From positions 1 to 64,000 of IMG/VR virus record IMGVR_UViG_3300009508_000011: a stretch of DNA of 64,000 bases; one strand, given 5' to 3'. Below the pieces are notes generated by a model. The model made no database searches. It was not told where the DNA came from and saw nothing but the letters and a program-made list of their open reading frames with translations. Both the position numbers and the translations under genes were made by a program. Below are positions 32,925-53,462 of this stretch, in pieces. Each line of letters begins with the position of its first letter. The first letter of the stretch is position 1.

Positions 32925-32970
32925 TCACTAATGTAATATGTATCTATCGTTTTCTGGGAACGACAAAAAA
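32925..32970 (-). promoter_or_regulatory. 46-bp early promoter/stem-loop cassette, copy 1
   Basis: TCACTAATGTAATATGTATCTATCGTTTTCTGGGAACGACAAAAAA; minus strand holds CATATTAC. Confidence 0.8.
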
Positions 32971-33014
32971 TACTGAGCCACTTCTTGTTATAGACCAATC
33001 TAAAGAGTTAAATC

Positions 33015-33248
33015 ATGGGGTTAGAATCATCACCAATAGACCCAGAACAATTAAAGTTCGGGGACACAATTTATTCCCATAAAGGACATAGACCATTTGT
33101 GGTTATGGGGTTTTGTAAATACGCACTTGACTGTAGTATCACTATGGTTAAATTTGTTAATGTTAAAGCTACTGCTGATACGCCACCCGGTCAAGAGTGG
33201 GTGTTAGACCTATCAACAGTTCTAAAGATGTTTGTTAAGGATATTTAA
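33015..33248 (+). CDS. Small hypothetical protein (SH3-like/DUF1653-like pattern)
   Basis: GDTIYSHKGHRPFVVMG pattern; coupled to the polymerase start. Confidence 0.6.
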   Translation: MGLESSPIDPEQLKFGDTIYSHKGHRPFVVMGFCKYALDCSITMVKFVNVKATADTPPGQEWVLDLSTVLKMFVKDI

Positions 33249-33249
33249 A

Positions 33250-35031
33250 ATGAGTAATTTACCAAAAGGTGTTAAAGGTTACGAGTGTAAACACGCCTTC
33301 TACACAGAAGCTACTGATAAGTCAAAAGACGACATAGTCTTAGTTAAACGTAATGTTCACCATGAAGACGGTACGATTACTCCAGAAGTAACCTTTGTGG
33401 AAAACTATGAGCGTGAGTTCTGGGTTGTCAATGAAGCACACCGTACCTACACTGAAAAGAAAGCGTGGGAAGATGAATTCAAATGTCGTAAGTTTAAAAC
33501 TCGTCAAAGTTACCTTACCGATAAAGTTACTCGTGCTTTAGGCCGTAGTCCTAGTGGTTGGGTTAGTAAGTCTATCCTATTCCGTTCACCTTACGTGTAT
33601 GGGGCAGATATAACAACCTCTGCTTTAATCAAGCGAGCATACATGGATAAGTTTGAAGATTGTACTTCTGAATCTACCATGGGCGTAATGGATATCGAGA
33701 CCGATGTTGTTAATGGTAACGGTAGTGAGATAATTTCTGCCTCATTTACTTTCCGCGATAATATTTACCTTGCCTACACTGAAAAGTTCATGGGTAAGGT
33801 TATGGACTACTCTAAGAAACTACAAGAGAAATATGAGTTCTATATCTCAGGCCTTGCTGATGATTTAGATAAAGTCTTACAGGGTAATGAAATCACTAAG
33901 AAGCGCAGACAGGTACTTGAACGTGCTCAGGCTACCTTACGTGCTCGTTCTAAAGTTAAGATACACACAAAGCTTGTGGGGAGTCCTGCACAGGTAACTA
34001 ACTATGTATTTAACGCAGCCCATGAACATAAGCCAGACTTCATTGCTTTCTGGAACATGAACTTCGATTTACCCAAAATGATTGCTTCCTTAGAACAAGC
34101 TGGAGTAGACCCTAAGCATGTTTTCTGTGAACCAACTTTACCTGAGAGATATAAACGTTTCAACTATAGAGCTGGTCAAGCCATTAAGCAAATTGCTGGT
34201 GGACGTACAATGTCTAAACATCCTGCCGACCTTTGGCATGTTGTTGATGCACCTGCATCATTCTACTTAATCGATGCTATGTCAGTATTTAAACAGGTAC
34301 GTGTAACCGAGGGTAACCGTAATAGTTATTCGTTAGATGCAATACTAACAGGTGAACTGAACCTTGGTAAACTTAAGTTTACTGAAGCAGACCACCTTAC
34401 TGGTCTAGATTGGCACGTATTCATGCAGACCAACTACAAACTAGAATATCTTATCTATAACATCTTTGACTGTATGTCAATTGAAATCTTAGATGATAAA
34501 AATAAAGATATTGCGCTAACGGTACCTACTCTTTGTCAGCATTCTGACTACGCTAGATTCCCTAGTACACCTAGACGCCTGTGTGACGACATGCACTTCT
34601 TCTTGAAGCAACACAAGAAAGTTATATCTACAACATCAGATGCCATGTCTGAAGATTTAGATAAATACGTTGTTGGCTCTAACGATTGGATTGTTACACT
34701 ACCTAGTCACTTGGTTGCAGATAACGGTCTTAAGTTATTAGATGAAGCACCGCATATAAGTTCAATGCTTCGTGTACACGTTGCCGACCTAGATGTTGCG
34801 TCTAGTTACCCTAACACAGGTTCTTTCATGAACATGTCAATGGAAACTACTAAACGTGAATTGGTTGGTGTTGGTGATATTAGTGAGTACGATAAACGCA
34901 TGTCTGGTTTGAACCTAACCGCCGCACGTACTAACGCAGTGGAATGTGCTGGTACATTCTTTAAGTTCCCTACCATGGATTCAATGTTAACTGAATTCCG
35001 TAAACAAAGAGAAGCTGGAGAATTACAGTAA
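33250..35031 (+). CDS. Split family-B DNA polymerase, exonuclease plus motif-A subunit (gp82-like)
   Basis: ExoI MDIETD, ExoII FWNMNFD, ExoIII YNIFDC, motif A DLDVASSYP; motifs B/C absent. Confidence 0.88.
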   Translation: MSNLPKGVKGYECKHAFYTEATDKSKDDIVLVKRNVHHEDGTITPEVTFVENYEREFWVVNEAHRTYTEKKAWEDEFKCRKFKTRQSYLTDKVTRALGRSPSGWVSKSILFRSPYVYGADITTSALIKRAYMDKFEDCTSESTMGVMDIETDVVNGNGSEIISASFTFRDNIYLAYTEKFMGKVMDYSKKLQEKYEFYISGLADDLDKVLQGNEITKKRRQVLERAQATLRARSKVKIHTKLVGSPAQVTNYVFNAAHEHKPDFIAFWNMNFDLPKMIASLEQAGVDPKHVFCEPTLPERYKRFNYRAGQAIKQIAGGRTMSKHPADLWHVVDAPASFYLIDAMSVFKQVRVTEGNRNSYSLDAILTGELNLGKLKFTEADHLTGLDWHVFMQTNYKLEYLIYNIFDCMSIEILDDKNKDIALTVPTLCQHSDYARFPSTPRRLCDDMHFFLKQHKKVISTTSDAMSEDLDKYVVGSNDWIVTLPSHLVADNGLKLLDEAPHISSMLRVHVADLDVASSYPNTGSFMNMSMETTKRELVGVGDISEYDKRMSGLNLTAARTNAVECAGTFFKFPTMDSMLTEFRKQREAGELQ

Positions 35032-35050
35032 GAGGCAAAAAAAAATAAGT

Positions 35051-35080
35051 GGAGAGCTTCGGCTCTCCCTTATGCCGTAT
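35051..35080. terminator. Bidirectional terminator plus TTATGCCGT; 30 bp identical to 43507-43536
   Basis: GGAGAGC-TTCG-GCTCTCC CTTATGCCGTAT. Confidence 0.9.
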
Positions 35081-35134
35081 AAACTTTATGTCCAGTTTCT
35101 ATTAGTTATAGAACATTCAAATTTATAGAATTCA

Positions 35135-35542
35135 CTAAACATCCCGCTCTCCGTTACCAATACGCTTAAGGTTATTGTCATCGTAGAAGTTATCTACCTT
35201 AGCCATAGTCCAAGCTAACTTGAATCGTGTCCACCACCTTAAAGGCTTAACACGCATTCTACGTTTAGCTTCTCTGTACTTCCTGCCATTTCCAAACTCA
35301 AACATGTACTGACCAGAATAATACTTAACTTCAATAAACCAAAAGTTTATGAACATAAAGTTCATGAGGATAGTATCCCCATCACGTAACCACCTAGCTG
35401 AGGTGTCCCTTTCTAAGACGTCGCTAAGTTTATAAGAGGCCTCAATCGCTTCCTCTAATGCAGCTATTTCTTCTTCATTTAAATCCAATTTTTTATTACC
35501 CACGAAGTCTCTCCTTTTATTTAAACGGTATAGACGAGGCAC
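35135..35542 (-). CDS. Hypothetical protein
   Basis: 135-aa ORF; start uncertain. Confidence 0.6.
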   Translation of the reverse strand: MPRLYRLNKRRDFVGNKKLDLNEEEIAALEEAIEASYKLSDVLERDTSARWLRDGDTILMNFMFINFWFIEVKYYSGQYMFEFGNGRKYREAKRRMRVKPLRWWTRFKLAWTMAKVDNFYDDNNLKRIGNGERDV

Positions 35543-35565
35543 TAGGCCTCGCTATTTATTGGGTG

Positions 35566-35946
35566 TTAAACTTCTGGTTCAGGTGGTGGCTCTACAGGAG
35601 CAACTGTTGTTGTAACAGTGCGGTAAGCATAGCCATTTTCATCTCCAGTGCGTTGATAGAAATCGCCACGATAGCAAAGTAATGTAGTAACTGCATCGGT
35701 AACTTCTTCAAGACCATCTTCTAACCCATCATCAAATGCTTGCTTGATGTAGTCGTCAGAATCAATTGCTTCCGCAGGAACTTCGTACACAGTAGTAGAT
35801 TCTGGAATAGAACCATATACCTTACCATCAATGATGCCTTTAAGTACCATAGGACGCTTGGTATTTAGATTTACGGTGTGGTCCATTTCCACGAATTGGT
35901 CTGTGATTGCCGGGTCGTTAATTAAAATCAATTCAACTTTATCCAC
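35566..35946 (-). CDS. Hypothetical acidic protein
   Basis: GTG start with AGGAG RBS; 126 aa. Confidence 0.75.
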   Translation of the reverse strand: MDKVELILINDPAITDQFVEMDHTVNLNTKRPMVLKGIIDGKVYGSIPESTTVYEVPAEAIDSDDYIKQAFDDGLEDGLEEVTDAVTTLLCYRGDFYQRTGDENGYAYRTVTTTVAPVEPPPEPEV

Positions 35947-35959
35947 GAGTTTCTCCTAG

Positions 35960-36901
35960 TTAGAATATTAGTAGTTGACCAACCTCTATCAGAGAAGGGT
36001 CTTTAATATCGTTCTTTGCAACCAGTTCACCTACGGTTGTATTAAGACGACGTGCTATAGAATAAAGGGTATCCCCATTGGTAACTAGATATAAGTTCTC
36101 AGTTACGTCTATAAAGGTACCATATTTAAGAGTGGTGTAGCTAACACCATTGACAGACATAAGAACTTCTGGGTGTATATTGTACATCTCAGCAATCTCT
36201 CCAATGGTATCGCCACGTTGTACATAATACTTGGTTCCGTTAACAAACCCCATGATGTCCTGAACATATGCTCTGGTCTCACGGAAGTTAGGTAATAGGT
36301 AACCACCATTAACCTTGCGTAGGTTATTAGGCCCTGCATTGTACGCACCCAAAACAATCTTAAGTGTGTACTCACTATGTTCAGATAAAGGCTTATCGAA
36401 TAGTAAGTCGTGTAGGTAAGCTAGATAACGAGCAGCGGCATCTGCCGACTCAAAGTTATCCATTATGTTTTCAACACCAAGGAAGTTAGCAGTACGGGGA
36501 CGTATCTGAAACATACCTTTAGCATTACGGTGAGATACCCTAGTATTATCTAGATGTGTCTCTTTCATACCCATACCTAGGAGTACTTTACCCGGTAGAC
36601 CATATTGATAACCTATAACATCCAACTCATCTATAGTTGGTACATCATCTGGATATCTGTTAAACGTAACAGCAGTTACCTTAACGTCTTCTACTATTAC
36701 TTCTTCTTCAACCACAGGTTCCTCAACCTTAGGTTCTATTTTTACTGGTTCAGGAGCCGCAACTGGCTCCACCTTTACTACTGCTGGTTCTATTACTTTA
36801 GGTTCATGTAAGTATTCAGATAACATCCATGTAGTCATCACCGCAATAATTATCGTCGTTACAAACGAGTAACGGGTTAGGGTCTTCTTTAGCATTTTCA
36901 T
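35960..36901 (-). CDS. Membrane-anchored SLT lytic transglycosylase with two LysM domains
   Basis: N-terminal TM; KETH catalytic Glu, AKGMFQI, YNAGP; YYVQRGDTIGEIA and YLVTNGDTLYSIA LysM repeats. Confidence 0.9.
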   Translation of the reverse strand: MKMLKKTLTRYSFVTTIIIAVMTTWMLSEYLHEPKVIEPAVVKVEPVAAPEPVKIEPKVEEPVVEEEVIVEDVKVTAVTFNRYPDDVPTIDELDVIGYQYGLPGKVLLGMGMKETHLDNTRVSHRNAKGMFQIRPRTANFLGVENIMDNFESADAAARYLAYLHDLLFDKPLSEHSEYTLKIVLGAYNAGPNNLRKVNGGYLLPNFRETRAYVQDIMGFVNGTKYYVQRGDTIGEIAEMYNIHPEVLMSVNGVSYTTLKYGTFIDVTENLYLVTNGDTLYSIARRLNTTVGELVAKNDIKDPSLIEVGQLLIF

Positions 36902-36906
36902 ATCTC

Positions 36907-37161
36907 CTATACTAAAGTATATAATACAGAAAGTTCAGAATTAACTTCTTTAACTTCTTGGTTTCTGTATTTATTTAAGTGAGTAATCACTTGGTTTATT
37001 TTCTCTTTTATTTCTTTACGTGTTTTAGAGCTAACAATCCATTTGATATACTGTAAGATTTTGGCAGCCGTAGCAGCCTTAAGAGTATTGCATGTATCAG
37101 TACTCACAATAACAAGAGAGCTATGTAGAGTCTGTATACGAGTTTTAAATATGTTTGACAT
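36907..37161 (-). CDS. Small basic accessory early protein
   Basis: 84 aa behind cassette copy 2; AAGGA RBS. Confidence 0.75.
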   Translation of the reverse strand: MSNIFKTRIQTLHSSLVIVSTDTCNTLKAATAAKILQYIKWIVSSKTRKEIKEKINQVITHLNKYRNQEVKEVNSELSVLYTLV

Positions 37162-37222
37162 GACGATTTCCTTTTATTTAATCGCTATAAAATTAATGGG
37201 TTGAGTATATTTTCATACTACT

Positions 37223-37268
37223 TCACTAATGTAATATGTATCTATCGTTTTCTGGGAACGACAAAAAA
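37223..37268 (-). promoter_or_regulatory. 46-bp early promoter/stem-loop cassette, copy 2
   Basis: Identical to 32925-32970. Confidence 0.8.
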
Positions 37269-37272
37269 ATAA

Positions 37273-37292
37273 GGAGGGACCGAAGTCCCTCC
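37273..37292 (-). terminator. Terminator abutting the cassette
   Basis: GGAGGGAC-CGAA-GTCCCTCC. Confidence 0.85.
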
Positions 37293-37349
37293 CTGTCCAA
37301 GTCGGACAATGCTGTGGGCTCCAGAGAGATACAACCCACATAACATTGA

Positions 37350-37784
37350 CTACTTAGCTATACGTTTACGAATGGTTACAGAGGTGATTGAATCTATGCG
37401 GTTAATCCAACTGAAGTCAAACTCTTCTATAGTATCTTCAGGTGGTGCCATAGAGGTACTTTTAAACACATCACGGCAATCGGAGTACCTTTCAATTCCT
37501 CTAATGGTAGTGATGTAAATAATAAAATCGCCAGTGTCTATTTCTAACTCAGCAACTTTGACATTAGGCTTTTTAATCTCAACCAGTACGATTGCTTCCA
37601 ACTCCCCACGAATGAGAGCTTCCAATTTATCATAATCGATAACTCTTTTCTGGCCGCTGTCAGTGTTATGTTCATTAATGAAGTTCTTCCATGCTCCCTT
37701 GAAATTAACAACTTCAACTGGAGAGAATTCAAATGAGGTATCCTCATCATTTCTTAAAACCTTTCTTACCTTTATAGGGTACAT
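37350..37784 (-). CDS. Accessory hypothetical protein
   Basis: 144 aa; AAGGAAAAG RBS; CATATTATAC early-like motif near 37833-37842. Confidence 0.75.
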   Translation of the reverse strand: MYPIKVRKVLRNDEDTSFEFSPVEVVNFKGAWKNFINEHNTDSGQKRVIDYDKLEALIRGELEAIVLVEIKKPNVKVAELEIDTGDFIIYITTIRGIERYSDCRDVFKSTSMAPPEDTIEEFDFSWINRIDSITSVTIRKRIAK

Positions 37785-37877
37785 ATTACTTTCCTTTTAC
37801 ACAGTACTAAGTTTAATGCTTTATTGCACTAGTATAATATGTGTTTGTTATTGTTTATAATTAAAGGTGTAGGTATA

Positions 37878-38021
37878 ATGAAGAAACGAAGACTTCTTCT
37901 AGCATTACTTTTCGTATCACCGTTGTTAATAACCCCAGCTACCATTTTACTAGAACCAATGCACGGTGCGGATATGATAGATGGTTGGGTTGAGAGAACA
38001 ACAGATACTAGATATGCATAG
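37878..38021 (+). CDS. Small signal-peptide/membrane protein (47 aa)
   Basis: MKKRRLLLALLFVSPLLITPA; AGGT RBS; hairpin downstream. Confidence 0.55.
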   Translation: MKKRRLLLALLFVSPLLITPATILLEPMHGADMIDGWVERTTDTRYA

Positions 38022-38029
38022 ATGTCATA

Positions 38030-38055
38030 AGTAGGAGTCCCAACGGACTCCTACT
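38030..38055. terminator. Bidirectional terminator followed by TTATGCCGT
   Basis: AGTAGGAGTCC-CAAC-GGACTCCTACT. Confidence 0.85.
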
Positions 38056-38071
38056 CACTTATGCCGTTTAA

Positions 38072-38803
38072 CTACTTAGAACTGTAGAAACCACGAACCT
38101 TCTGACCAATGTCAGCTGTATATTCACTCAATAACGTATCGAATGAAATAGCTTTCAATGCAGCACCACGACCTTCTTTATCCGCAGTAGAAGACATCAA
38201 TACTAAGATGTTTTCGAAACGAGCACGAGAGGCAGGTGGAATACGCATTTCATTGAAACCACGGAATAACATGTTATCTGCGAACGTACCTGGGTACTCA
38301 GCCATGATATCCAAAGCACTACCGAACACTTCAGTAAATGCAGCACCTTCAAGGTTGTTAATGATTGCACTAATCGCTTGGTACAATTTCATTTGATTAC
38401 GTAAAATTGTTAACTTGTCATTAGGCTTGTTAGGAGCCATTGTAACAGCGTATTCAAGAATTGTTTGACAGTTAGGGTTTAACTCAGCTTTAACTTCTTC
38501 TGAGATTGTTTCTAACTCAACAGCAGGACTAGCAGGAGTTTCCTGACTATCACCAGCAGGCGGTGGAGTTTGCTCAGTGTCGTCGCCAGCAGGTGGGATA
38601 ACTACTGTTTCTTCAGAACCAGCCGCAGGACCTTCTTCGTCACCACTACCTTCAGTAGGAGTTCCTTCAGCAGGTTTGTTGTTAGATACTTGTTCAGGTG
38701 TGCCACCCGTTTGTTCAGTACCTTCAACTTTAGTTTCGGTGTTTTGCTCGTCACCAGATTTAACTTCTTGCTCTTTAGCAACTGTTTGTTTTTTTCTAGA
38801 CAT
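38072..38803 (-). CDS. Conserved hypothetical protein with disordered P/E/T-rich N-terminus
   Basis: ATG 38803 with GGAG; folded C-terminal half (EYAVTMAPNKP...NQMKLYQAI). Confidence 0.75.
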   Translation of the reverse strand: MSRKKQTVAKEQEVKSGDEQNTETKVEGTEQTGGTPEQVSNNKPAEGTPTEGSGDEEGPAAGSEETVVIPPAGDDTEQTPPPAGDSQETPASPAVELETISEEVKAELNPNCQTILEYAVTMAPNKPNDKLTILRNQMKLYQAISAIINNLEGAAFTEVFGSALDIMAEYPGTFADNMLFRGFNEMRIPPASRARFENILVLMSSTADKEGRGAALKAISFDTLLSEYTADIGQKVRGFYSSK

Positions 38804-38816
38804 TCTCATATCTCCG

Positions 38817-39266
38817 TTAGTTATCATTCATTTCGTCTTCGAGGTCTTGTAGGGCATTGTTCTTCTCTTTAGATATCTCTAAAGCAACATCCATGATGTG
38901 CTCAGCTATATCACGAGGCAACTCCATAAATTCATTCAAGGACAAACCAAAAGTTTTAGCGATGTTACGCTTACCAAACTTACGAATGGCATCATATAGT
39001 AAGCTGTCAGGACTGACCTGCTCAGCTGGATACATCTTAACGTAATCCAAGCCAGTAACATCTCTGTCATCGTAATTAGCTATACCATACGCTGTGTCGT
39101 AAGCCTCTACTTGCAAAGTCTTTGCGAGCAAAGTACTAATACCGGTTTGGGTTTCGAAAAGGTTGCTAAGTTCTTTACCGTACTCAACACCCCTCTCTAA
39201 TCCAAATTTAGTATCTATGACAGAGGTCGGCTTACCGTCGACTGAATTCTTTGCTCGCAGAGGGTA
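38817..39266 (-). CDS. Tail/baseplate assembly chaperone-like C-terminal ORF, probably reached by -1 frameshift
   Basis: Frame open from 39311 with no ATG/GTG/TTG before TTG 39131 and no RBS there; FGLSLNEFMELP resembles T4 gp51/tail-chaperone T motifs. Confidence 0.55.
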   Translation of the reverse strand, partial: YPLRAKNSVDGKPTSVIDTKFGLERGVEYGKELSNLFETQTGISTLLAKTLQVEAYDTAYGIANYDDRDVTGLDYVKMYPAEQVSPDSLLYDAIRKFGKRNIAKTFGLSLNEFMELPRDIAEHIMDVALEISKEKNNALQDLEDEMNDN

Positions 39267-40672: not shown

Positions 40673-40674
40673 TA

Positions 40675-41124: not shown

Positions 41125-41215
41125 CGATTGCTCCTTTAATATGAATTCAATTAAATTTAGTGCTACACATAACTAAACAGATGTGAGTAAAAAATACCCT
41201 AAGGAGAAATGAGTC

Positions 41216-42040: not shown

Positions 42041-42058
42041 CAGACCAAAGGTTTAAAC

Positions 42059-43536: not shown

Positions 43537-43596
43537 TTGTATGATAGTCGCCAGCTATCAATCGTGGTTAACTACATTAACTGAAAGGATTAAACC

Positions 43597-43989: not shown

Positions 43990-44027
43990 GGTGAAAAAAA
44001 AATAAGGAGGGCTAGTGCCCTCCGTAT

Positions 44028-44762: not shown

Positions 44763-44850
44763 CGTAATTCCTCATTTTATTTAAACTTTCCTTTTATGTG
44801 TTTACGAAAAAAATAAAGGGGCACTAAGCCCCTTTTTATTCTCAGCTATT

Positions 44851-45936: not shown

Positions 45937-46005
45937 TGTTTTTAACTCCTAATATAGGTGATATCACAATGAGTTGTTAGTTGCACTGCTACTCCATGGT
46001 ACTAC

Positions 46006-46767
46006 TTAGTTTATATCAAACTCACCACGCACTTTCATGCTGGAGTTCAGGTTGATGTTAATGCTAGCAACCCTTTTTCTAAAGTACAGAGGCATGTTAA
46101 TGAAAGCCAGTAGGTCTAGTATTGCTAAAGACATACTTGACGGTAACTTACCTGTATCCTTAATAACGACTAACAACTCCCCTTTTTCTTTCAACGCATA
46201 ATCGTCCTCCAATGTTTCTATAAACTTACTACACATAGCCGCACGACAAACTAATGTCTCTTGGTTCTGTATAGATATAACACCACACATCTTGGCATAG
46301 TGGAACAGCCAATCAGTTTGACCTTCAAAACAAGCCTTGTTACCAGCTTTGAGTTGTGTCAAATAGTACTCCATAGATTTCAGGATAATATCTGCCATGA
46401 AATCATTGCAACCTTGTAACTCTCGGATTTCTACCAATAGTTCATGTCGGTACACCTCTACCAAAGCCGCGTACACTCTAAATGAGCTAGGCATGGTGAA
46501 GTACTCTGACAAATACAAGTTTGACGGTATATCGGATATATCAACGTAATTAATTGTTTCAATATCCGGACTAGTTTGAGCGACAACTTCTTTTTGCTTT
46601 GGTTGTACCACCTCAGTTGGTGGTCTATGTACTTGGTTGTCTTTTGCTTCAGATTTTTCGGTAATAGCGCCGTCCCTAAGGTTGGCGCATTTAGCAGCTA
46701 CGTTTAATGCTACATTACCAAGAAATTCTAAAGTCCAGTTGGTTATGGGCTTTAGTCTTTCCTTCAC
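46006..46767 (-). CDS. Hypothetical protein
   Basis: 253 aa; GTGA overlap with helicase stop. Confidence 0.7.
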   Translation of the reverse strand: MKERLKPITNWTLEFLGNVALNVAAKCANLRDGAITEKSEAKDNQVHRPPTEVVQPKQKEVVAQTSPDIETINYVDISDIPSNLYLSEYFTMPSSFRVYAALVEVYRHELLVEIRELQGCNDFMADIILKSMEYYLTQLKAGNKACFEGQTDWLFHYAKMCGVISIQNQETLVCRAAMCSKFIETLEDDYALKEKGELLVVIKDTGKLPSSMSLAILDLLAFINMPLYFRKRVASININLNSSMKVRGEFDIN

Positions 46768-48293
46768 TTTAGCGGTCTCCCTATAATGAATGAAGATTCC
46801 ATTTCACCTATCGATTTAACACGTGGACGGAGAAGCTTTTTCTTCTTCTCATGGTACTCCATATGCTTCGGTAGATTCCTCGCTAGGATATACATGAAAT
46901 CTGGTTCAACATCAGGCCAATCCTTTAACTTCCTCAACCTGCCCACAATCTGGATATTAGCCTGACTGGAACTGATATTGGTCGTCATTAGACTGTAGCG
47001 TAACCCTGGTATATCAACACCAGTACCTGCCGATAAAGCAGTAGACACAGAAATGTCTGATTCCATAAGGACTTCATAGTCATCCTCAGAAATGTACCGT
47101 GCAACATCTAGGGTAGGGTTTCGTATAGCCAAGTGGTCAGCTATCTTACCACACATCTCCTTAGTAGCCGCAAAGACTAAAGCTTTCTGCCCGTCCTCTC
47201 TACGACCAACGTACATGTCATATACCAGAGCATCAATCATCGCTAGGTATTGTGCTAGATAAAGAGGCTTCTTAAGAATGCTTTCTTCAAATAGCGTATG
47301 ACTATACATCTTCTGTTGGTTGATGTGTCTAATCTTCTCAGGTTCCCACAACTCGTACGTAAGTGCTCGCACACGAATGTATCTATCGAAATCACCAGGC
47401 ATGAAACGCATTCGCTCAGGCCATTGTATCTGTAACATTTTGTTACGGAATGGTGAGTCGGTAGTTATAGTAGCCGATAGGAAGATGGTCTTAGGTATAT
47501 GTGCATACAAGTCCATCTTGAAGATTTGATGTTGGTTTTCATGGGCTTCGTCAACAACTCTTAATCCAACCCCTAGAACTTTCCACAGCTCCCAAGGTTT
47601 TATCGGATAACCTCTCAGCTTACCCATCTCGTAATCTTTATAGAAACGAGCAAGTGTTGTAGTTGAAGCAATGATAGCCTTGTAATTGAATTCTCCAGCC
47701 AGTGATAAATTGATTGCACTTAACAAAGCTTTACTGCCACGTATAACGCAAATCTCTTTCTTACTTAACTGTAGACATTCTTCAAGGTCACCAATCCATT
47801 TCTCGATATACTTACCACCCATTTGGAAACAGGTAAGTACCCCAAGAGTTTCAGCAGCTTTTTGACTACAGAAAGTTTTACCTTGTCCTGTAGCAAGTGT
47901 AACTACTTTAGATTCACCGGGGTCTTCCATATACTGGATTACCCGTGGTTGGTCATCTCTTGGTTGCCAATGGTCAGGAATACTGTAATTCACTTCATTA
48001 GGAGTGTACATTCGCTTATGCGTTATGTCAATCAGATGAATTGGAATGCCAGCGTTCTTTACCATATCGATGAATTCATCGTACTGGTTAATGTGGAAAC
48101 GATAATAGCTTCTGTCAGCACACGAGGCTGCATAGACTTTCTTAGCTTCCTTGTGAAACTTACCTCTCGCGTAGAATCCCGCCCACTCAATGAGAGGACG
48201 GAGAAAATTACCGATGAGAGGTCGCATACGAGGTGATATCTTAGTCACCGAGAAATGGTGACTATAAACAGATATGTTACAATATTGACTCAA
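46764..48293 (-). CDS. Superfamily 2 DEAH helicase (gp75-like)
   Basis: LATGQGKT, VVDEAH, LSAT, QIVGRLR. Confidence 0.92.
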   Translation of the reverse strand: MSQYCNISVYSHHFSVTKISPRMRPLIGNFLRPLIEWAGFYARGKFHKEAKKVYAASCADRSYYRFHINQYDEFIDMVKNAGIPIHLIDITHKRMYTPNEVNYSIPDHWQPRDDQPRVIQYMEDPGESKVVTLATGQGKTFCSQKAAETLGVLTCFQMGGKYIEKWIGDLEECLQLSKKEICVIRGSKALLSAINLSLAGEFNYKAIIASTTTLARFYKDYEMGKLRGYPIKPWELWKVLGVGLRVVDEAHENQHQIFKMDLYAHIPKTIFLSATITTDSPFRNKMLQIQWPERMRFMPGDFDRYIRVRALTYELWEPEKIRHINQQKMYSHTLFEESILKKPLYLAQYLAMIDALVYDMYVGRREDGQKALVFAATKEMCGKIADHLAIRNPTLDVARYISEDDYEVLMESDISVSTALSAGTGVDIPGLRYSLMTTNISSSQANIQIVGRLRKLKDWPDVEPDFMYILARNLPKHMEYHEKKKKLLRPRVKSIGEMESSFIIGRPLK

Positions 48294-48318
48294 AATTAAC
48301 CTCTCCCGTTGTTGCCAG

Positions 48319-50295
48319 TTACCCCGCTAGAATATTGTCGAAGTTGTGGTCAGGATTATTCTTGTTGATATAAGACGAAGCACGCATTATAACATCACCA
48401 TGTCTTTCAAATGCCATAGCCGCAGACATACTACGGTTAAACATATTCTCACGATGAATGTTAAACGATTCTTCCTCTTGACCAATAGGTGGACAATTTG
48501 AATTGGCCCGCACAGTTGATGTTACCATAGACGACAATAACAATATCTCAAGATGCAATACATTTACATTAGCTCTGCTATTTACAATATCGTAAAGTTT
48601 ACGCAGCGCCTCAGCAGAAGTCTTACATGCAAAGACACCATTACGACCTTTCTTCTCAATGAAGTTAGATATGCTTTTCATGTACTCAAGCATGTTCATG
48701 TGTCGTTGTGGCATTACCAAGAATGGTTTACTAAACGTCCAATGTGCTAAATCAATCACATAGTCGCCATAGTTATCAACTTCCCAACCGTACTTCTTCA
48801 AGTACTCTAGAAATTCATAAGTAAAGCTAGCTAGACGTGGTCCTACTGAAGTAGGTACAATATTATCCACGTTCTCATCTACACCTTTACTGTTTTTGAT
48901 TGTTCGTCTAATAACGATTTCAGCCATAGCAGCAAGTGTTGTAGTAGGGAGAATTTTAACATCAACAACTTCAGGGTTATTAATGTCTTCCAGATATTTA
49001 ACGTACTGTTCTGGAATAACTAACTTTGGACTTTGGTCTTTCAGGGTCATGTGGAATTGAATCTTAGACTGGTCAGTAGTGTTCAACTTAATGAACTCCG
49101 CATCACGAGCTTCTATATTCAAATGTTCAGCAACCGATGAACCATCTTCATGTTTGGTAGACATTACCTTTTGGGTTACGAATGAACATAACGCAATAGC
49201 ACTAATGTGTCCCAATCTAGTAGCCTGCTTATAATACATCTGACTTGGTATTGAATAACTCAAAGACCCACAGCATGTTTCACAGACCATATACTCATGA
49301 CGATGTTTACATTCCAAAGCAGAACGTAAGCGAATTAACTTACCTTCCAAATGTTTAGATTGCTTAGTAATTTCTTCCAGTTTACCATCTGCTGTAACAT
49401 GTACCTTACCAGCAAGATTACCAAGTGATTTCTTTGTAACTAAGAATTCAACTGTACCGGAAGTTCCACAGTCACCGGGAACTAAACCTTTTACGTATTG
49501 GTTTTGTAAAGATACTTTACGACCAAAGTACTCAGTAGCACGTAGAGGTTCAGTTGTAACTTTAAGTGCCTTAGTACCAGAGCGTGACTCCATAGCAGAA
49601 TCAGCAATCTTCTTAAGACCCTCAGCGTATCCCGGCATAACTGGTCTACGGAATATATTGGAATCGTAATCTGTTATAAAACCACGAGGACCAATAGCCT
49701 GTAATACCTGACCAACCGATATTAAAGATGCACGACACGCTACACAGACAGCATTGTCATTAAGTGTAGGACAGTTCATTATAATGTCAGTAATCTGGCG
49801 ATAGGTTTGCTCAAGACTAGCAGTACTAGGACGCGCTTCAGCCTTAGCTTCCTTTATTACAGGATGTTCTAACAGTTCAAGATAATCGAGAACTGAGATT
49901 GTTGTTACGTATGCTTCTAGTTCTTCACCAGTAAACACAAATACATTGTTAAAGATAATCATTGCCATACGGTTTAATAAATCCATATCGCGACAGATAC
50001 CTTGGTCGAAACATTCCCACAGAGGCCGTGAGATTAATTTCTTATGGACACTATTACCGAAAACAACATTACCGATATGGTGATGTGGCAATAGAGGTAA
50101 CTGAGGGAATTGACGATGGTAATCCCAATAGATAGTTGACACTATAGTCTTACGACCATTGAGTGTTTCTATTGTACCATCATCGAACTCCACCTGCATC
50201 GTTAACACGTCACAGTAACGTTCCATAAGTTCTTCCATCGAGAGAGGTAACAAGTCTCTCGCTTTAACTACGCCATCAAGGTGTATTGGATGCAT
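48319..50295 (-). CDS. Non-virion RNA polymerase beta' C-terminal subunit (gp74-like)
   Basis: IGPRGF, ESRSGTKAL, DCGT, LRSALEC...CETCCG, TQKVMSTKH trigger-loop equivalent. Confidence 0.9.
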   Translation of the reverse strand: MHPIHLDGVVKARDLLPLSMEELMERYCDVLTMQVEFDDGTIETLNGRKTIVSTIYWDYHRQFPQLPLLPHHHIGNVVFGNSVHKKLISRPLWECFDQGICRDMDLLNRMAMIIFNNVFVFTGEELEAYVTTISVLDYLELLEHPVIKEAKAEARPSTASLEQTYRQITDIIMNCPTLNDNAVCVACRASLISVGQVLQAIGPRGFITDYDSNIFRRPVMPGYAEGLKKIADSAMESRSGTKALKVTTEPLRATEYFGRKVSLQNQYVKGLVPGDCGTSGTVEFLVTKKSLGNLAGKVHVTADGKLEEITKQSKHLEGKLIRLRSALECKHRHEYMVCETCCGSLSYSIPSQMYYKQATRLGHISAIALCSFVTQKVMSTKHEDGSSVAEHLNIEARDAEFIKLNTTDQSKIQFHMTLKDQSPKLVIPEQYVKYLEDINNPEVVDVKILPTTTLAAMAEIVIRRTIKNSKGVDENVDNIVPTSVGPRLASFTYEFLEYLKKYGWEVDNYGDYVIDLAHWTFSKPFLVMPQRHMNMLEYMKSISNFIEKKGRNGVFACKTSAEALRKLYDIVNSRANVNVLHLEILLLSSMVTSTVRANSNCPPIGQEEESFNIHRENMFNRSMSAAMAFERHGDVIMRASSYINKNNPDHNFDNILAG

Positions 50296-50324
50296 AATTG
50301 AATATTTCCTTTTAAGTTAATTCG

Positions 50325-52493
50325 TTATTTACCAGGTTTATACGGAGCGTATCTAAATTCAACGCCACCGCACATCATCAAATGTTTCATGAGTTGCAAT
50401 GGACGTGAGTTACCACGAGGTATTTTCTTACGGTTAACAACACAATCAATATCGGTAGGTTTCTCAGCCGTCATTATATTGTGGTTAATTTCTTCTGATG
50501 AATACAACGAGTTAGTTCTATCCAACAATTCCGCTACTATATCTGGGTCCATAACCGCAGACATTAGACGTACCTCTGATTCACCTGCAAAACGCACAGG
50601 AGATTCACGATAAGGGTTAAGATATTTATCCGCTCTACCCAACTGTACAACAATGCCGTGATGTTGACGCTTAGCAATTGAAGTAGTTGACCAATCTTCA
50701 CCAGTTTTATCTAGCAACATCATGTACTTAGTATCAATGGCTACAGGACGCTTAGTAGTAATCATCTTACCTGAGTTACCACGATAGGTAACAGGACCGA
50801 CAATACTTTTACAATTAGCTTCTATATCCTTGACTTGCTGAATACCGATGTTAGGACTATTTGGTGGCAGCATTAAAGTAATGGCTTCTTGGTCAGTTAG
50901 TTTAGGATTACCCACTTCACGAACATGATTATCTTGTTTATCTTTACTATCAAGATGTTTCATGCAATACCAATACATATACGGCGACGCTGCTTTATAA
51001 TACGCCATTAGAATCTGATAACCTTCTTCCAATGATGCACAAGCACGAACACGTCTAGCACATTGTGTACTGGCTTGGTTAGTCCACTGCTCAAATATCT
51101 GACCAACATTAGAACGCTTAATTACTGAAAGCGGGTCTTTAATAACATCTGCTACAATACCACAAGCAGTAGTAGGCATATCAGCATCTGGACGAATACC
51201 AACTATTACACCTTTTGTACCGTGAGTATCCGTAATCTTGTAACCGATTGTTGGAACCTTACGATAGGCATAAGTTATTTCAATGTTGAAGTCATCTAGA
51301 GGGGCTTTGTTCTTGGTGCGAACAACTCTATCCTTACTTGAGTCATTAAAGTTAGCATACGCTTCAACTACCCAAGAATGGAAAGCAGGAGTTATATCCA
51401 AGTTACCACGACGTTTACTATTGTTCTGCTGATAAAGCTCTATTATTTTTCTATAGAACAAATCCTTACTTTGCACATACTTCAACATCTCGTCATCCAT
51501 TCCAGTAGGAGTGGTTCGATATCTAGCATTGTGGTCAGTTAGTATTTCAACATCTACAATAGTTGCACCAGGCTGAGCATAAATCGTTTTGTCAAATTCG
51601 ATGTCTACTCTATCACCCAACAGATTACGAGGATGTAAATCTGAGATGGTTAAGTTTTCATCTATCGTACGGAAAGCCATAACTAAACCGTCTTCACGAA
51701 TTTTCTCACCGGGACCAGGGAAAGGTTTATAGTGATTCTCATCACCGTACAGATTAAGTGGGAATATATGCTTACCACAAGAAGCTGTACGAGTACCTAA
51801 CATAGTCGTTGCCAACTTACGTTGATAACTCTCACTAATTTCAAAACCATCCTCAATGATACCTGGGACAGTCATGTAAGCTACGTTAGTTTCAATACCG
51901 TACTCGTAGTTACCTTCATTATCTACACAAGGAGAATCTGCAAGTACTGTACCTTTACCAACATTGCCACCTTTAGTGATGCGTTGTAAAGCATGTGTGT
52001 TCTGTTTGTATTTCCAACCCAGACTTGTGTGCTGGAAGAAGTATTTCTCAAGTAGGATACTTCCGATTTCTTTTGTTTCAAAATCTTCATATACTACCAA
52101 GGTAGAAGGGTTTTCTTTAATAGCTCCCTGAGATACCTGCTTAGCATATTTAGGGAACACACCAAGGATTGTTGCATTGACAGGAATGCGTTGATTAAAA
52201 GTGTACTTACCAAATTCACGTTCCGTACCAGTAAGGTTACGACGTACTGTAGAGCCTTCAGTTACCAAACGTTGTTTAAGGTGAGATGCTTGCATCTGCT
52301 GACGAGATGCTGAGTTAACGGCTACCCAAGGATTCAAATTTGTTGGAGCACCAACAAGTTCAATATCTAATTCGTTGACTAAACTGGCCTTCCCCTCATC
52401 GTCAAGGGTCACGAACAGTTCTGTCTGTAAATCCATATACAATGGTTCACCGTCCATATCCGTGATATGAAGAAATCGTTTATCATCAATCAT
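50325..52493 (-). CDS. Non-virion RNA polymerase beta C-terminal subunit (gp71-73-like), uninterrupted
   Basis: GYKITDTHGTKG, PLSVIKRSNVGQIFE, VRFAGESEVR. Confidence 0.92.
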   Translation of the reverse strand: MIDDKRFLHITDMDGEPLYMDLQTELFVTLDDEGKASLVNELDIELVGAPTNLNPWVAVNSASRQQMQASHLKQRLVTEGSTVRRNLTGTEREFGKYTFNQRIPVNATILGVFPKYAKQVSQGAIKENPSTLVVYEDFETKEIGSILLEKYFFQHTSLGWKYKQNTHALQRITKGGNVGKGTVLADSPCVDNEGNYEYGIETNVAYMTVPGIIEDGFEISESYQRKLATTMLGTRTASCGKHIFPLNLYGDENHYKPFPGPGEKIREDGLVMAFRTIDENLTISDLHPRNLLGDRVDIEFDKTIYAQPGATIVDVEILTDHNARYRTTPTGMDDEMLKYVQSKDLFYRKIIELYQQNNSKRRGNLDITPAFHSWVVEAYANFNDSSKDRVVRTKNKAPLDDFNIEITYAYRKVPTIGYKITDTHGTKGVIVGIRPDADMPTTACGIVADVIKDPLSVIKRSNVGQIFEQWTNQASTQCARRVRACASLEEGYQILMAYYKAASPYMYWYCMKHLDSKDKQDNHVREVGNPKLTDQEAITLMLPPNSPNIGIQQVKDIEANCKSIVGPVTYRGNSGKMITTKRPVAIDTKYMMLLDKTGEDWSTTSIAKRQHHGIVVQLGRADKYLNPYRESPVRFAGESEVRLMSAVMDPDIVAELLDRTNSLYSSEEINHNIMTAEKPTDIDCVVNRKKIPRGNSRPLQLMKHLMMCGGVEFRYAPYKPGK

Positions 52494-52615
52494 TCTTATA
52501 GTTTCCTTTTATTTTATTAAGAGTGTATGCCATTAGATAATATATGTTTATAATTATTTAATCGGGTAGGTATCTCTTTTTATGTTTAGTTCTTAGAAGC
52601 TTCGGAGACCAGCTA

Positions 52616-52951
52616 ATGGATATCACCAAAAGCATGAATAGTGAAGGAGCTGACATTTTCTACGACTCCGATTTCCGGAGTGTTCTGGAAGACCATGTCC
52701 CTCTACTGAGAGATGATGCTGCTACAGAAATAGTTAATGTCAAATCTAACGTAGCCTATAAATTTGAATACGATTTAACTGGCTATTTATCATCTATTAA
52801 TGTACCACATTACTTACATTGGATAACAATGAGAATTAATGGATGGAAGAAGGATACAGAGTTCTTCAACCCAACTATGATTCGAATTCCGCATCGTAAT
52901 AGTGTAAATAAAATAAAACAAATGTTTGAAGCAACCACTACAAAAAAATAG
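52616..52951 (+). CDS. Small conserved protein, LysM/T4 gp53-like baseplate wedge candidate
   Basis: HWITMRING...IRIP pattern; TATG motif at 52581; GGAG RBS. Confidence 0.5.
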   Translation: MDITKSMNSEGADIFYDSDFRSVLEDHVPLLRDDAATEIVNVKSNVAYKFEYDLTGYLSSINVPHYLHWITMRINGWKKDTEFFNPTMIRIPHRNSVNKIKQMFEATTTKK

Positions 52952-53051
52952 ATGGCTGCGTATTTTTTTCACTTAAAAAGCAGGGGATTCTCAGGAATCC
53001 TCGCTTATGCCGTTCGGTTAAAACAAAAAAAAGAGGGAATCCCCTCTTTCT

Positions 53052-53363
53052 TCATCGGATAGATATTCTACTTACAGAACAACTAGATTTCCCCACTAAC
53101 TTCTCAAGCTCTATGGCATCACTATCCTCATCCACATCGATGACGACCGCTAATGTTTTTGGTTTATTGACAGTGTAATAATCCAATAATTTGTTTAGGT
53201 CAGGAACCATTGAGTCCTTATCTTCACCAGTCAGTAATATGGTAACCTTGCCACTATGTGGACCACTGACATATATACCCTTTTTAATCGTGCAAGGAGT
53301 AATAACTCCTAACTCTACCAATTTCTCATGTGTGCCCATTGGTGCTTTATTAACGTTTCTCAT
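53052..53363 (-). CDS. Accessory early protein, paralogue of 32554-32892
   Basis: 103 aa behind cassette copy 3. Confidence 0.8.
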   Translation of the reverse strand: MRNVNKAPMGTHEKLVELGVITPCTIKKGIYVSGPHSGKVTILLTGEDKDSMVPDLNKLLDYYTVNKPKTLAVVIDVDEDSDAIELEKLVGKSSCSVSRISIR

Positions 53364-53416
53364 TTATCTTTTCCTTTTATTTAAAGATTAACGATACTAA
53401 TGATTTAGTATCTAAC

Positions 53417-53462
53417 TCACTATTGTAATATGTATCTATTGTTTTCTGGGAACGACAAAAAA
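53417..53462 (-). promoter_or_regulatory. 46-bp early promoter/stem-loop cassette, copy 3
   Basis: 44 of 46 bases identical to copies 1 and 2. Confidence 0.8.

What the first reader, a model, noticed from the sequence alone, without database searches (positions are those of the whole stretch)
32925..53462. Dispersed 46-bp promoter/stem-loop cassette driving lone accessory genes
Copies at 32925-32970 and 37223-37268 are identical, and 53417-53462 differs at 2 positions. Each contains an early-type CATATTAC, an upstream TCGTT-N7-AACGA mini-hairpin and a T-run. Each drives one short minus-strand ORF with its own downstream terminator or gene boundary inside a core block. The conserved length far exceeds a promoter consensus. 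This parallels the PeSL mobile regulatory cassettes of T4-type phage RB49; I know of no description in chimalliviruses.
Basis: partly seen in the sequence, partly recalled or inferred. Interest (0 to 1): 0.72.

Follow-up and report, generated by a model that had tools for sequence, protein, structure and literature searches.

The report
Portable early-promoter cassette in jumbo phage
A marine nucleus-forming jumbo phage carries five near-identical copies of a terminator-tail plus early-type promoter unit, and the small unknown genes directly behind these units are gained, lost or swapped between relatives, much like the promoter/stem-loop cassettes of T4-like phages.

Summary
The repeat is real. 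The three window copies are exactly as described, and the 206-kb genome holds two more, at 178553 and 198674. All five are on the minus strand.

The 46-mer is a composite. Columns 1-6 are the T-rich tail of an upstream terminator. Columns 7-46 are a distinct subclass of this phage's phiKZ/OBP-type early promoter, ending at GTGA, the predicted start site. The "mini-hairpin" is not supported: weak fold, no covariation, 3' arm polymorphic.

Two copies (37223, 178553) are ancestral and lead operons. Three (32925, 53417, 198674) head self-contained promoter-leader-ORFan-terminator modules. Both sequenced relatives lack all three modules, and the first is also missing in near-identical marine strains.

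In relatives, the same promoter family carries unrelated cargo at the same sites.

So the PeSL parallel holds for architecture and for gene turnover. It fails on promoter type (not sigma-70) and on paired flanking copies.

No transcription data exist, and a causal role for the cassette in recombination is inferred.

Verdict: a new variant of a known kind (PeSL/moron-like), moderately interesting.

The parts
32925..32970 (-). Cassette copy A (type I). The promoter part is 32925-32964. The T-run 32965-32970 is shared with a divergent AAAAAATAC motif (32965-32973, + strand) upstream of the DNA polymerase gene.
   Evidence: T-run present at the empty site in G001, G002 and strain L052
32887..32924 (-). 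Leader of module A, containing the conserved ribosome-binding block TAAATAAAAGGA. With the cassette it forms an 81-nt stretch that is 93% identical to copy C at 198634-198714.
32554..32892 (-). Cargo A: a 112-aa ORFan, 37% identical to its paralog cargo B. It is absent from G001, G002 and G004 and from the strains in runs X2 and X4.
32518..32545 (-). Module A's own terminator (hairpin plus T10), marking the 3' boundary of the inserted module.
37223..37268 (-). Cassette copy at the ancestral type I locus. It is conserved at the orthologous place in G001 (4 mismatches) and G002 (2 mismatches).
37272..37294 (-). GC-rich terminator hairpin directly abutting the 37223 cassette. Its T tail supplies columns 1-6 of the 46-mer.
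35566..37161 (-). Operon behind the 37223 cassette: an 84-aa ORF (36907-37161), an SLT/LysM transglycosylase (35960-36901) and a 126-aa ORF (35566-35946), ending at terminator 35533-35552. The cargo is fixed in relatives and in near-identical strains.
53417..53462 (-). Cassette copy B (type I, 2 substitutions, one of them in the 3' arm of the supposed mini-hairpin).
53463..53486 (-). Terminator hairpin directly abutting cassette B.
53052..53363 (-). Cargo B: a 103-aa ORFan. It is absent from G001 and G002 but present in all near-identical strains that were looked up.
53026..53053 (-). Module B's own terminator (hairpin plus T-run plus GT). Its tail resembles the tail at the empty site in G002.
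52530..52560 (-). General-class early-type promoter (TATATTAT...) upstream of the homolog of phiKZ nvRNAP gp071/073 (50325-52493). It serves as the reference for the promoter class.
37825..37857 (-). General-class early-type promoter upstream of 37350-37784.
56381..56413 (-). General-class early-type promoter upstream of 54907-56358.
57988..58020 (-). General-class early-type promoter upstream of 56421-57965, and the best PWM score in the genome.

Best explanation
The 46-mer is the interval from the tail of an intrinsic terminator to a predicted transcription start.

Anatomy: columns 1-6 (T-run or TTAT) are terminator tail. Columns 7-46 (GTCGTTYCCARAAAAC, then ATAGATA-CATATTAC-AWTA-GTGA) are a conserved subclass of the phage's own early promoter. 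That promoter type is the one phiKZ-like phages use for the injected virion RNA polymerase. Transcription is predicted to start at or next to GTGA and to run through a 32-61 nt leader with a shared ribosome-binding block into small ORFan genes.

Evolution: two loci are old and lead operons. The position directly behind the cassette is a cargo slot. Complete 'promoter - leader - ORFan - own terminator' modules sit at terminator tails between conserved genes, and they differ between relatives and strains.

Inferred step: the cassette, its leader and the terminator tails are the longest conserved non-coding sequences shared within and between co-infecting relatives. They would therefore act as portable short homology for recombination. 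New genes would arrive already wired for early expression and insulated from their neighbours, as PeSLs do in T4-like phages and morons do in lambdoid phages.
For: SHOWN
- Copies and conservation: there are 5 copies, and 36 of 46 columns are invariant across 10 copies from three genomes plus one strain. Those genomes are only 72-75% identical in DNA overall.
- Promoter class: the core matches the published early-promoter consensuses (201phi2-1 ...TATATTACDWHDGTG; OBP/N1M2 ...KATATTATYWAAGTG; phiKZ TATATTAC; PMC7058600).
- Early assignment: a general class of about 15-20 such sites per genome stands upstream of homologs of phiKZ nvRNAP gp055, gp071/073/074 and chimallin. It does not stand upstream of the vRNAP gp080 homolog. 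This fits early genes as described in PMC7598289, PMC8244752 and PMC13282480.
- Terminators: hairpins abut 4 of 5 copies. Modules A, B and C have their own downstream terminators.
- Lineage-specific modules: A, B and C are absent from G001 and G002, which show clean empty sites ending in the same T-run or TTATGCCG tails.
- Strain polymorphism: module A is missing from a >99%-identical strain (contig L052) and from the strain in run X4.
- Cargo differences behind the same promoter family (unrelated genes at the same site, or genes added or missing):
  - G001 has an extra 144-aa gene behind the type II cassette, flanked by 30-nt perfect repeats.
  - At the 93822 site, G000 and G001 carry unrelated ORFs behind the same promoter, and G002 is empty.
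  - A fourth relative has a type II cassette plus a duplicated terminator hairpin at site C with an unrelated 124-aa cargo. At its 178553-type locus the first two genes are missing.
- Mosaic copies: copy C matches the 178553 copy 49/49 nt, then shares its leader with copy A (81 nt, 93%).
- Association: 3 of 5 cassette-led first genes are lineage-specific, against 22 of 225 other genes (Fisher p = 0.01). For the wider ATATTAC family it is 4 of 7, against 2 of 15 for the general class.
Against: - No transcript 5' ends are available, so promoter activity, timing and polymerase are inferred from sequence class and gene context only.
- Each module carries one cassette, not two flanking ones. The empty sites in relatives hold no cassette. 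Cassette-to-cassette homologous recombination therefore cannot by itself explain first insertions; junction homology is only a 6-10 nt T-run or TTATG-CG tail.
- In the X2-type strain the variant block (32494-33031) is wider than the module. That looks like allele replacement through flanking homology rather than precise insertion.
- Other accessory genes turn over without the cassette: 35135-35542, the 77-aa ORF at 33015-33248, and G001's gene at site B.
- The statistics rest on very small counts and partly post hoc classes.
- High identity among copies could be purifying selection alone, because orthologous copies are just as conserved.
Confidence: 0.6

Rival explanations
1. This is an ordinary, strongly constrained promoter and nothing more. 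The copies look alike because the polymerase or a factor needs all 40 nt. Accessory genes come and go at intergenic sites by unrelated illegitimate recombination, and only arrivals that happen to carry or capture a working early promoter survive. The link between cassette and variable cargo would then be a selection filter, not a mechanism.
For: - Orthologous copies in G001 and G002 are as conserved (91-98%) as the paralogous ones, so selection alone can hold the sequence.
- Published early promoters of phiKZ-like phages are conserved over about 34 nt.
- Other genes turn over without the cassette.
- Junction homology at the empty sites is only a T-run.
Against: - Copy A is identical (46/46) to the resident 37223 copy, whereas the G001 ortholog differs at 4 positions. 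Copy C equals the 178553 copy over 49 nt including leader bases. Both point to copying within the lineage rather than independent arrival.
- Promoter and leader segments are mosaic between copies.
- In the fourth relative the hairpin plus cassette is duplicated as one unit of about 85 nt at the same site C, with different cargo.
- Perfect 30-36 nt direct repeats of leader sequence flank inserted genes.
Confidence: 0.3
2. The upstream half of the cassette (GTCGTTYCCARAAAAC) is an operator for a phage-encoded factor. It would give this promoter subclass its own timing or strength, for example immediate-early or dual early/late expression. In type II copies it overlaps a TATG, which is the phiKZ late-start motif. 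This reading is compatible with the best explanation.
For: - The upstream half is invariant across genomes, yet it differs from the T-rich tract of the general class.
- A diverged member at 98899 keeps GTCGTTTCC separate from the terminator tail, and G004 keeps GTTGTTTTCAAAAAGC.
- phiKZ late starts use T-3ATG+1 (PMC7598289).
Against: - No candidate factor has been identified.
- TATG is absent from type I copies.
- The TTATGYCGT motif mostly lies between convergent genes or ahead of another promoter, so it behaves as a terminator tail.
Confidence: 0.15
3. The TCGTT-N7-AACGA mini-hairpin is a functional DNA or RNA structure.
For: A 5-bp stem can be drawn, and 4 of the 5 pairs never vary.
Against: - The fold is weak: -2.7 kcal/mol, z = -1.17, with 25 of 200 shuffles folding as well.
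- The only variable pair is broken (G to A or T) in 4 of 9 distinct copies with no compensating change. The covariation score is 0.
- The stem lies upstream of the predicted start, so this promoter would not transcribe it.
Confidence: 0.03
4. It is a true PeSL, that is, a host sigma-70 early promoter plus stem-loop.
For: The composite of terminator plus promoter and the association with ORFans.
Against: - No sigma-70-like -35/-10 pair is called on any of the three window copies.
- The core matches the vRNAP-type consensus.
- The phage encodes both phiKZ-type RNA polymerases and chimallin.
Confidence: 0.03

Closest known systems
PeSL (promoter-early stem-loop) cassettes of T4-like phages RB49/phi1, PST, nt-1 (PMC2839356, PMC4122927)
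   Same: - A composite of a terminator stem-loop directly upstream of an early promoter and a Shine-Dalgarno region.
- Repeated through the genome and associated with ORFans.
- Insertions, deletions and replacements between relatives map to the element.
- Chimeric copies occur.
- Modules are insulated from neighbouring genes.
   Different: - The promoter is of the phiKZ-like virion-RNAP early type, not sigma-70.
- There are few copies (2-5 per genome) in single slots inside conserved blocks, not dense hyperplastic regions.
- Modules carry one cassette plus a plain terminator, not two flanking cassettes.
- No mini-circles have been shown.
Morons of lambdoid phages (promoter-gene-terminator units inserted between genes adjacent in relatives; from my own knowledge of Juhala et al. 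2000 and Hendrix, not read here)
   Same: Modules A, B and C are single ORFs with their own predicted promoter and their own terminator. Each lies between genes that are adjacent in G001 and G002. Their GC content is slightly below the gene mean.
   Different: - The phage is lytic and nucleus-forming.
- The promoter is the phage's own early type and is nearly identical between modules.
- Morons do not share a common promoter cassette.
Early (vRNAP) promoters of phiKZ-like phages: phiKZ, 201phi2-1, OBP, EL, N1M2 (PMC7058600, PMC7598289, PMC8244752, PMC11512511)
   Same: - The ATATTA(C/T) core followed by N4-GTG.
- Conservation over 30-35 nt.
- Location on the main coding strand upstream of early operons.
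- 5' leaders of about 30-60 nt.
   Different: - The cassette subclass replaces the T-rich upstream tract by GTCGTTYCCARAAAAC.
- It begins with C (CATATTAC).
- It is fused directly to a terminator tail.
- It is linked to variable cargo.

Membership tests
PeSL cassettes (T4-like phages) | Terminator-type stem-loop immediately upstream of an early promoter, forming one conserved composite | tested here: met
   GC-rich hairpins (-14 to -24 kcal/mol) abut 4 of 5 copies. In the fourth relative the hairpin plus cassette is duplicated as one unit. Copy 32925 has no hairpin.
PeSL cassettes (T4-like phages) | Promoter matches the host sigma-70 consensus with an AT-rich upstream region | tested here: not met
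   No sigma-70-like hexamer pair is called on the three window copies. The core matches the phiKZ-type early consensus.
PeSL cassettes (T4-like phages) | Preferential association with ORFans and variable genes | tested here: met
   3 of 5 first genes are lineage-specific, against 22 of 225 others (p = 0.01). All cargo lacks Pfam matches. However, the sites are single slots in conserved blocks, not hyperplastic regions.
PeSL cassettes (T4-like phages) | Indels and replacements between close relatives map to the element | tested here: met
PeSL cassettes (T4-like phages) | ORFans flanked by two copies, whose recombination excises mini-circles | tested here: not met
   Each module has one cassette. 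Its downstream end is a plain terminator, and the flanking repeats are only T-runs. Circles themselves are not testable here.
phiKZ-like vRNAP early promoters | Conserved AT-rich element ...ATATTA(C/T) centred near -10, with GTG near the start | tested here: met
   Alignment A1 compared with the published consensuses.
phiKZ-like vRNAP early promoters | T-rich tract upstream of about -19 | tested here: not met
   The cassette has GTCGTTYCCARAAAAC at that place, whereas the general class has the T-rich tract.
phiKZ-like vRNAP early promoters | Stands upstream of known early genes (nvRNAP subunits, chimallin) | tested here: inconclusive
   This holds for the general class. The cassette subclass precedes ORFans and a transglycosylase operon whose timing is unknown.
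phiKZ-like vRNAP early promoters | Mapped transcription start; host-RNAP-independent, protein-synthesis-independent transcription | not testable with these tools
   The only RNA-type run (X19) is held as contigs, and those contigs break at the repeat.
Morons | Single gene with its own promoter and terminator, between genes that are adjacent in relatives | tested here: met
   Modules A, B and C. The promoter is predicted, not shown.

The most novel reading that the evidence does not exclude
Terminator-promoter cassettes recognised by the injected virion RNA polymerase are an active gene-exchange device of nucleus-forming jumbo phages. Under this reading, recombination at cassette, leader and terminator-tail sequences (possibly through excised circles, as with PeSLs) moves ready-to-express early ORFans between co-infecting relatives into a few insulated slots. 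The special upstream half of the cassette would mark an 'accessory early' promoter class with its own regulation.
Probability: 0.25. Interest if true: 0.75.

Novelty: new variant of a known kind. Interest (0 to 1): 0.55.

Why it matters
Chimalliviruses (nucleus-forming jumbo phages) carry many non-essential early genes of unknown function, and some are thought to serve host take-over and counter-defence. How such genes enter a genome transcribed by the phage's own polymerases is not described in the papers I could search.

If this cassette is the entry point, three things follow:
- It gives a sequence handle for finding the variable early gene set in uncultured jumbo phages.
- It shows that PeSL/moron-like modular shuffling arose again on a non-sigma-70 promoter.
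- It gives engineers a natural, insulated 'landing pad' (terminator - early promoter - leader - gene - terminator) for jumbo-phage genomes.

It also shows that in this clade the early promoter has at least two subclasses, which transcript mapping could test.

Tried and rejected
- DNA searches: megablast and blastn of the region against 50,697 phage records gave no match. Exact-pattern scans found the cassette only in G001 and G002 among viral contigs, in strains of this clade among metagenome contigs, and nowhere in bacterial or archaeal genomes.
- Cargo function: Pfam and PHROGs gave nothing usable. Related-locus scans for cargo A and cargo C gave nothing. Homology searches found only the phage's own strains and weak paralogs. 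The Atlas search for cargo A gave nothing usable. The AlphaFold2 model of cargo C from a 3-sequence alignment had mean pLDDT 34.6, so no fold search was run.
- Mini-hairpin: rejected as a functional element.
- Sigma-70 promoter reading: rejected.
- TTATG(C/T)CGT as a late promoter: considered because phiKZ late starts use TATG. Most copies lie between convergent genes or ahead of another promoter, so I treat it as a terminator tail.
- Start-site inference from run X19: rejected, because its contigs break at the repeated cassette and leader.
- Ceyssens 2014 and the OBP genome paper are not held in the library. phiKZ and OBP promoter facts are therefore cited second-hand from PMC7058600, PMC7598289 and PMC8244752.
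Full report
**1. Observation**

The 46-mer at 32925-32970 equals 37223-37268. The copy at 53417-53462 differs at two positions. None of 100 shuffles gave any match. The window is bases 1-64000 of a 206,117-bp virus record with direct terminal repeats. The full genome has two further copies on the same strand, at 178553-178598 and 198674-198719. Self-BLAST shows this family is the main dispersed repeat of the genome. About 80% of genes lie on that strand (183 of 230 crude calls), so the shared orientation is not remarkable in itself.

**2. What genome this is**

- No DNA-level match exists in the phage collection.
- It encodes phiKZ-type multisubunit RNA polymerase pieces. Homologs of nvRNAP gp055, gp071/073 and gp074 and of vRNAP gp080 have E-values of 1e-42 to 1e-94.
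- It encodes a homolog of the phiKZ nuclear shell protein chimallin (E = 3e-35). It is therefore a chimallivirus-type jumbo phage.
- Near-identical sequence occurs in many marine metagenomes.
- Four relatives were recovered:

| Relative | DNA-pol aa identity to G000 | Mean aa identity to G000 |
|---|---|---|
| G001 | 87% | 69% |
| G002 | 82% | 65% |
| G003 (a fragment like G002) | 82% | not computed |
| G004 | 57% | 47% |

- DNA identity is 74.6% for G000-G001, 71.8% for G000-G002 and 71.6% for G001-G002.

**3. Anatomy**

An alignment of ten copies (five from G000, two from G001, two from G002, one strain variant) has 36 of 46 columns invariant. There are two subtypes.

- Type I starts TTTTTTGTCGTTCCCAG: copies 32925, 37223 and 53417, plus one copy each in G001 and G002.
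- Type II starts ATTTATGTCGTTTCCAAAAAAC: copies 178553 and 198674, plus one copy each in G001 and G002.

In four of the five G000 copies a GC-rich hairpin (-14 to -24 kcal/mol) ends exactly where the 46-mer begins. Columns 1-6 are therefore its T-rich tail. At 32925 there is no hairpin. There the T-run is the reverse complement of an AAAAAATAC motif upstream of the divergent DNA polymerase gene, and it is present at the empty site in all relatives.

Conservation stops at GTGA. What follows is a variable 32-61 nt leader ending in a shared TAAATAAAAGGA ribosome-binding block.

Modules 32925, 53417 and 198674 have their own hairpin-plus-T-run terminator right after a single ORF. The 37223 and 178553 copies run into operons.

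**4. The promoter class**

A position matrix built from twelve non-cassette sites finds about 15-20 sites per genome in all four genomes. All are on the main coding strand and lie 20-80 nt upstream of starts. The consensus is a T-rich tract, then CAGACA-TATATTAT-CNNA-GTGA.

This matches the predicted early promoters tabulated in PMC7058600: the OBP and N1M2 consensus, 201phi2-1 (...TATATTACDWHDGTG) and phiKZ (TATATTAC). Reviews state that such roughly 10-nt AT-rich elements sit near -10 of early vRNAP promoters (PMC7598289). They also state that phiKZ early promoters drive the nvRNAP genes and gp054 (PMC13282480; PMC8244752).

In this genome the general class stands upstream of the homologs of gp055, gp071/073(/074) and chimallin. 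It does not stand upstream of the vRNAP gp080 homolog. I therefore read the class as early promoters. This is an inference, because no transcript data exist.

The cassette shares the core (ATAGATA-CATATTAC-AWTA-GTGA) but replaces the T-rich tract by GTCGTTYCCARAAAAC. Two further sites show that this upstream half belongs to the promoter and is old:

- A diverged member at about 98899 is conserved in G001 and G002, and keeps GTCGTTTCC separate from the terminator tail.
- A site in G004 reads GTTGTTTTCAAAAAGC-TATAGATACATATTAC.

No sigma-70-like hexamer pair is called on any window copy.

Published consensuses span about 34 nt. A 40-nt promoter plus a 6-nt terminator tail therefore accounts for the 46 nt, and the length is not anomalous.

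**5. The mini-hairpin**

As single-stranded DNA it folds at -2.7 kcal/mol (z = -1.17; 25 of 200 shuffles fold as well). Its only variable pair (C9:G23) is broken (G to A or T) in 4 of 9 distinct copies with no compensating change. The covariation score is 0. I reject it as a functional structure.

**6. Relatives**

*Ancestral loci.* The 37223 and 178553 loci are ancestral. The same cargo orthologs (56-67% aa identity) follow the cassette in G001 and G002.

*Lineage-specific modules.* Modules A (32925), B (53417) and C (198674) and their cargo have no counterpart in G001, G002 or G004. The junctions are as follows.

| Site | State in relatives | Junction detail |
|---|---|---|
| A | G001 and G002 empty | Both keep '...cagtaTTTTTT' and then continue into unrelated short sequence |
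| B | G002 empty; G001 holds a different gene without a cassette | G002 has hairpin-T8-GTCTAG, then the convergent terminator. G000 has hairpin-T-run-GTCGTT..., the module, then hairpin-T8-GTTTT before the same convergent terminator |
| C | G001 and G002 empty | Both have hairpin-TTTATGCCGY followed by the next gene's AAAAATAC-type motif. G000 has hairpin-TTATGTCGTT..., the module, then hairpin-T-run-GTCT before that motif |

Each inserted unit therefore runs from just after a terminator tail to the end of its own terminator tail.

Given the tree ((G000,G001),G002), gain in the G000 lineage is the parsimonious reading. Three of five cassette-led first genes are lineage-specific, against 22 of 225 other genes (Fisher p = 0.01).

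**7. Strains**

Contigs from other marine samples were laid on 31600-37500. They show a >99%-identical strain (run X2; the same contig was fetched as L052) that skips 32494-33031, with 92 other letters in its place. A 96-98%-identical strain (run X4) skips 32494-33242. Both therefore lack module A.

The aligned empty allele reads '...cagtaATTTTTagaatc...'. The replaced block is somewhat wider than the module, which suggests allele exchange through flanking homology.

The X2 strain still has the other four copies, as shown by loose ends. Modules B and C and the two ancestral loci are unchanged in all contigs that carry identical flanking proteins. Another strain carries module A with an 89%-identical cargo and a cassette differing at two positions.

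**8. Same promoter, different cargo**

- In G001 an extra 144-aa gene with no homolog in G000, G002 or G004 sits directly behind the type II cassette. It is flanked by perfect 30-nt repeats of the leader/RBS/start.
- Behind the related promoter at about 93822 (TATATTAC-TATAGTGA), G000 has a 318-aa ORF, G001 has an unrelated 286-aa ORF, and G002 has only a terminator.
- A fourth relative was found by a metagenome scan, as contigs L083 and L088. At site C it has a type II cassette with an unrelated 124-aa ORF and its own terminator. Here the upstream terminator hairpin is duplicated together with the cassette, as an 85-nt unit shared with that phage's 178553-type locus. At that 178553-type locus the cassette is followed directly by the ortholog of 177320-177673, so the first two G000 genes are absent.
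- Site C has thus been filled at least twice, with different breakpoints and different cargo.

**9. Mosaicism**

Copy C equals the 178553 copy over 49 nt. It shares 8 leader bases with 37223. It then shares the rest of its leader with copy A (81 nt at 93% overall). Copy B shares leader bases with the 93822 promoter.

Elsewhere in the window, the lineage-specific gene 18872-19483 is flanked by perfect 36-nt repeats of leader/RBS sequence. These are the footprints expected if short conserved regulatory sequences serve as recombination substrates.

**10. Cargo**

- All cargo genes are ORFans by Pfam and PHROGs.
- Cargo A and cargo B are paralogs at 37% identity, while their cassettes are 96% identical.
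- Cargo C has an HExxH motif and a conserved LPWELEAYATMYTDE block. It is a 32%-identical paralog of 195421-196110 and its G001 ortholog. A metallopeptidase is a guess only, because the structure model failed.
- Cargo GC is 0.30-0.385, against a gene mean of 0.399 (sd 0.024).

**11. Interpretation**

*Shown:* the repeat, its composite anatomy, its conservation, and the turnover of cargo behind it.

*Inferred from class and context:* early, vRNAP-type promoter activity with a start near GTGA.

*Inferred from mosaic copies, flanking repeats and recurrent use of the same sites:* the cassette, leader and terminator tails act as portable homology that mediates the turnover.

*Main rival:* selection alone explains the link, because only insertions with a working early promoter persist. 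I cannot exclude this, for two reasons. The empty sites hold no cassette, and junction homology is only a T-run.

**12. Comparison and novelty**

*PeSLs.* PeSLs are stem-loop terminator plus AT-rich region plus sigma-70 early promoter composites. They flank ORFans in T4-like phages, recombine with each other and yield mini-circles (PMC2839356; PMC4122927). The present element shares the composite architecture, the ORFan link and the indel mapping. It fails on promoter type and on paired flanking copies.

*Morons.* Modules A, B and C also fit the classical definition of morons (from my own knowledge, not read here).

*Literature check.* Searches of the held literature found no PeSL-like description for phiKZ-like phages. 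Absence from this library is not proof of absence.

*Rating.* I rate it a new variant of a known kind.

Noticed in passing
genome-wide; in the window e.g. 6698(-), 13068(+), 29317(-), 35071(+), 38060(+), 43527(+), 53006(+): A GC-rich hairpin followed by cTTATG(C/T)CGT occurs about 24 times. The + strand copies carry an A-run on the other side, making them bidirectional terminators. It looks like a conserved terminator-tail motif. It contains TATG, the phiKZ late-start motif, but mostly lies between convergent genes or ahead of another promoter.
   Followed up: partly
genome-wide; in the window 32493(-), 32965(+), 41189(+), 52968(-): AAAAAATAC occurs 19 times, and 54 of the 64 AAAAAATA 8-mers lie in intergenic DNA. 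It usually sits 25-70 nt upstream of genes and is often followed by TATAGAAC-like bases. It resembles the phiKZ middle-promoter description (an A-rich run plus TACT near -22, PMC8244752). It is probably the middle-promoter class of this phage.
   Followed up: partly
window 18852-18887 and 19480-19515, flanking 18872-19483: A lineage-specific 203-aa gene is flanked by perfect 36-nt direct repeats of leader/RBS/start-codon sequence. This is a second kind of insertion footprint, without the promoter cassette.
   Followed up: partly
window 35135-35542 (-): This 135-aa ORF has no counterpart in G001 or G002. It is skipped in the contigs of runs X2 and X19 and replaced by 230 other letters in X4. 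It follows a hairpin plus TAAATAAAAGGAG with no early-type promoter.
   Followed up: partly
window 33015-33248 (+): A 77-aa ORF just upstream of the DNA polymerase gene is absent from G001, G002 and the X4 strain. The polymerase itself starts at ATG 33250, not at the TTG at 33232 given by the ORF list.
   Followed up: partly
genome-wide, 15 sites, all on the - strand (e.g. window 3601, 35523, 56354): The block TAAATAA(A/C)AGGA lies just before start codons, giving a strongly conserved leader/RBS shared by many genes. In two cases (67812, 77401) it follows hairpin-TTATGTCGTT directly, that is, the cassette's two ends without the promoter between them.
   Followed up: no
G004 (loci L045/L046): 130474-130523 = 136986-137035; also 30822-30854 = 141501-141533: The most distant relative has its own sets of identical promoter-plus-leader repeats (up to 50 nt) of the general TATATTAT class. 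Near-identical promoter copies within a genome are therefore a clade-wide habit.
   Followed up: no
G000 198003-198638 (outside the window) and 195421-196110: Cargo C and its paralog share HExxH and LPWELEAYATMYTDE blocks, so they may be small metallopeptidases. No Pfam family matches, and the AlphaFold model was unusable.
   Followed up: partly
G000 185256-185375 and 191282-191401 (outside the window): A 120-nt direct repeat (97.5% identical) lies inside or near large + strand genes. It is unrelated to the cassette.
   Followed up: no
window 1-123 = G000 205995-206117: A 123-bp terminal direct repeat of the record. It is an assembly-type overlap consistent with a complete, circularly assembled genome, although CheckV rates the record 76% complete.
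   Followed up: no
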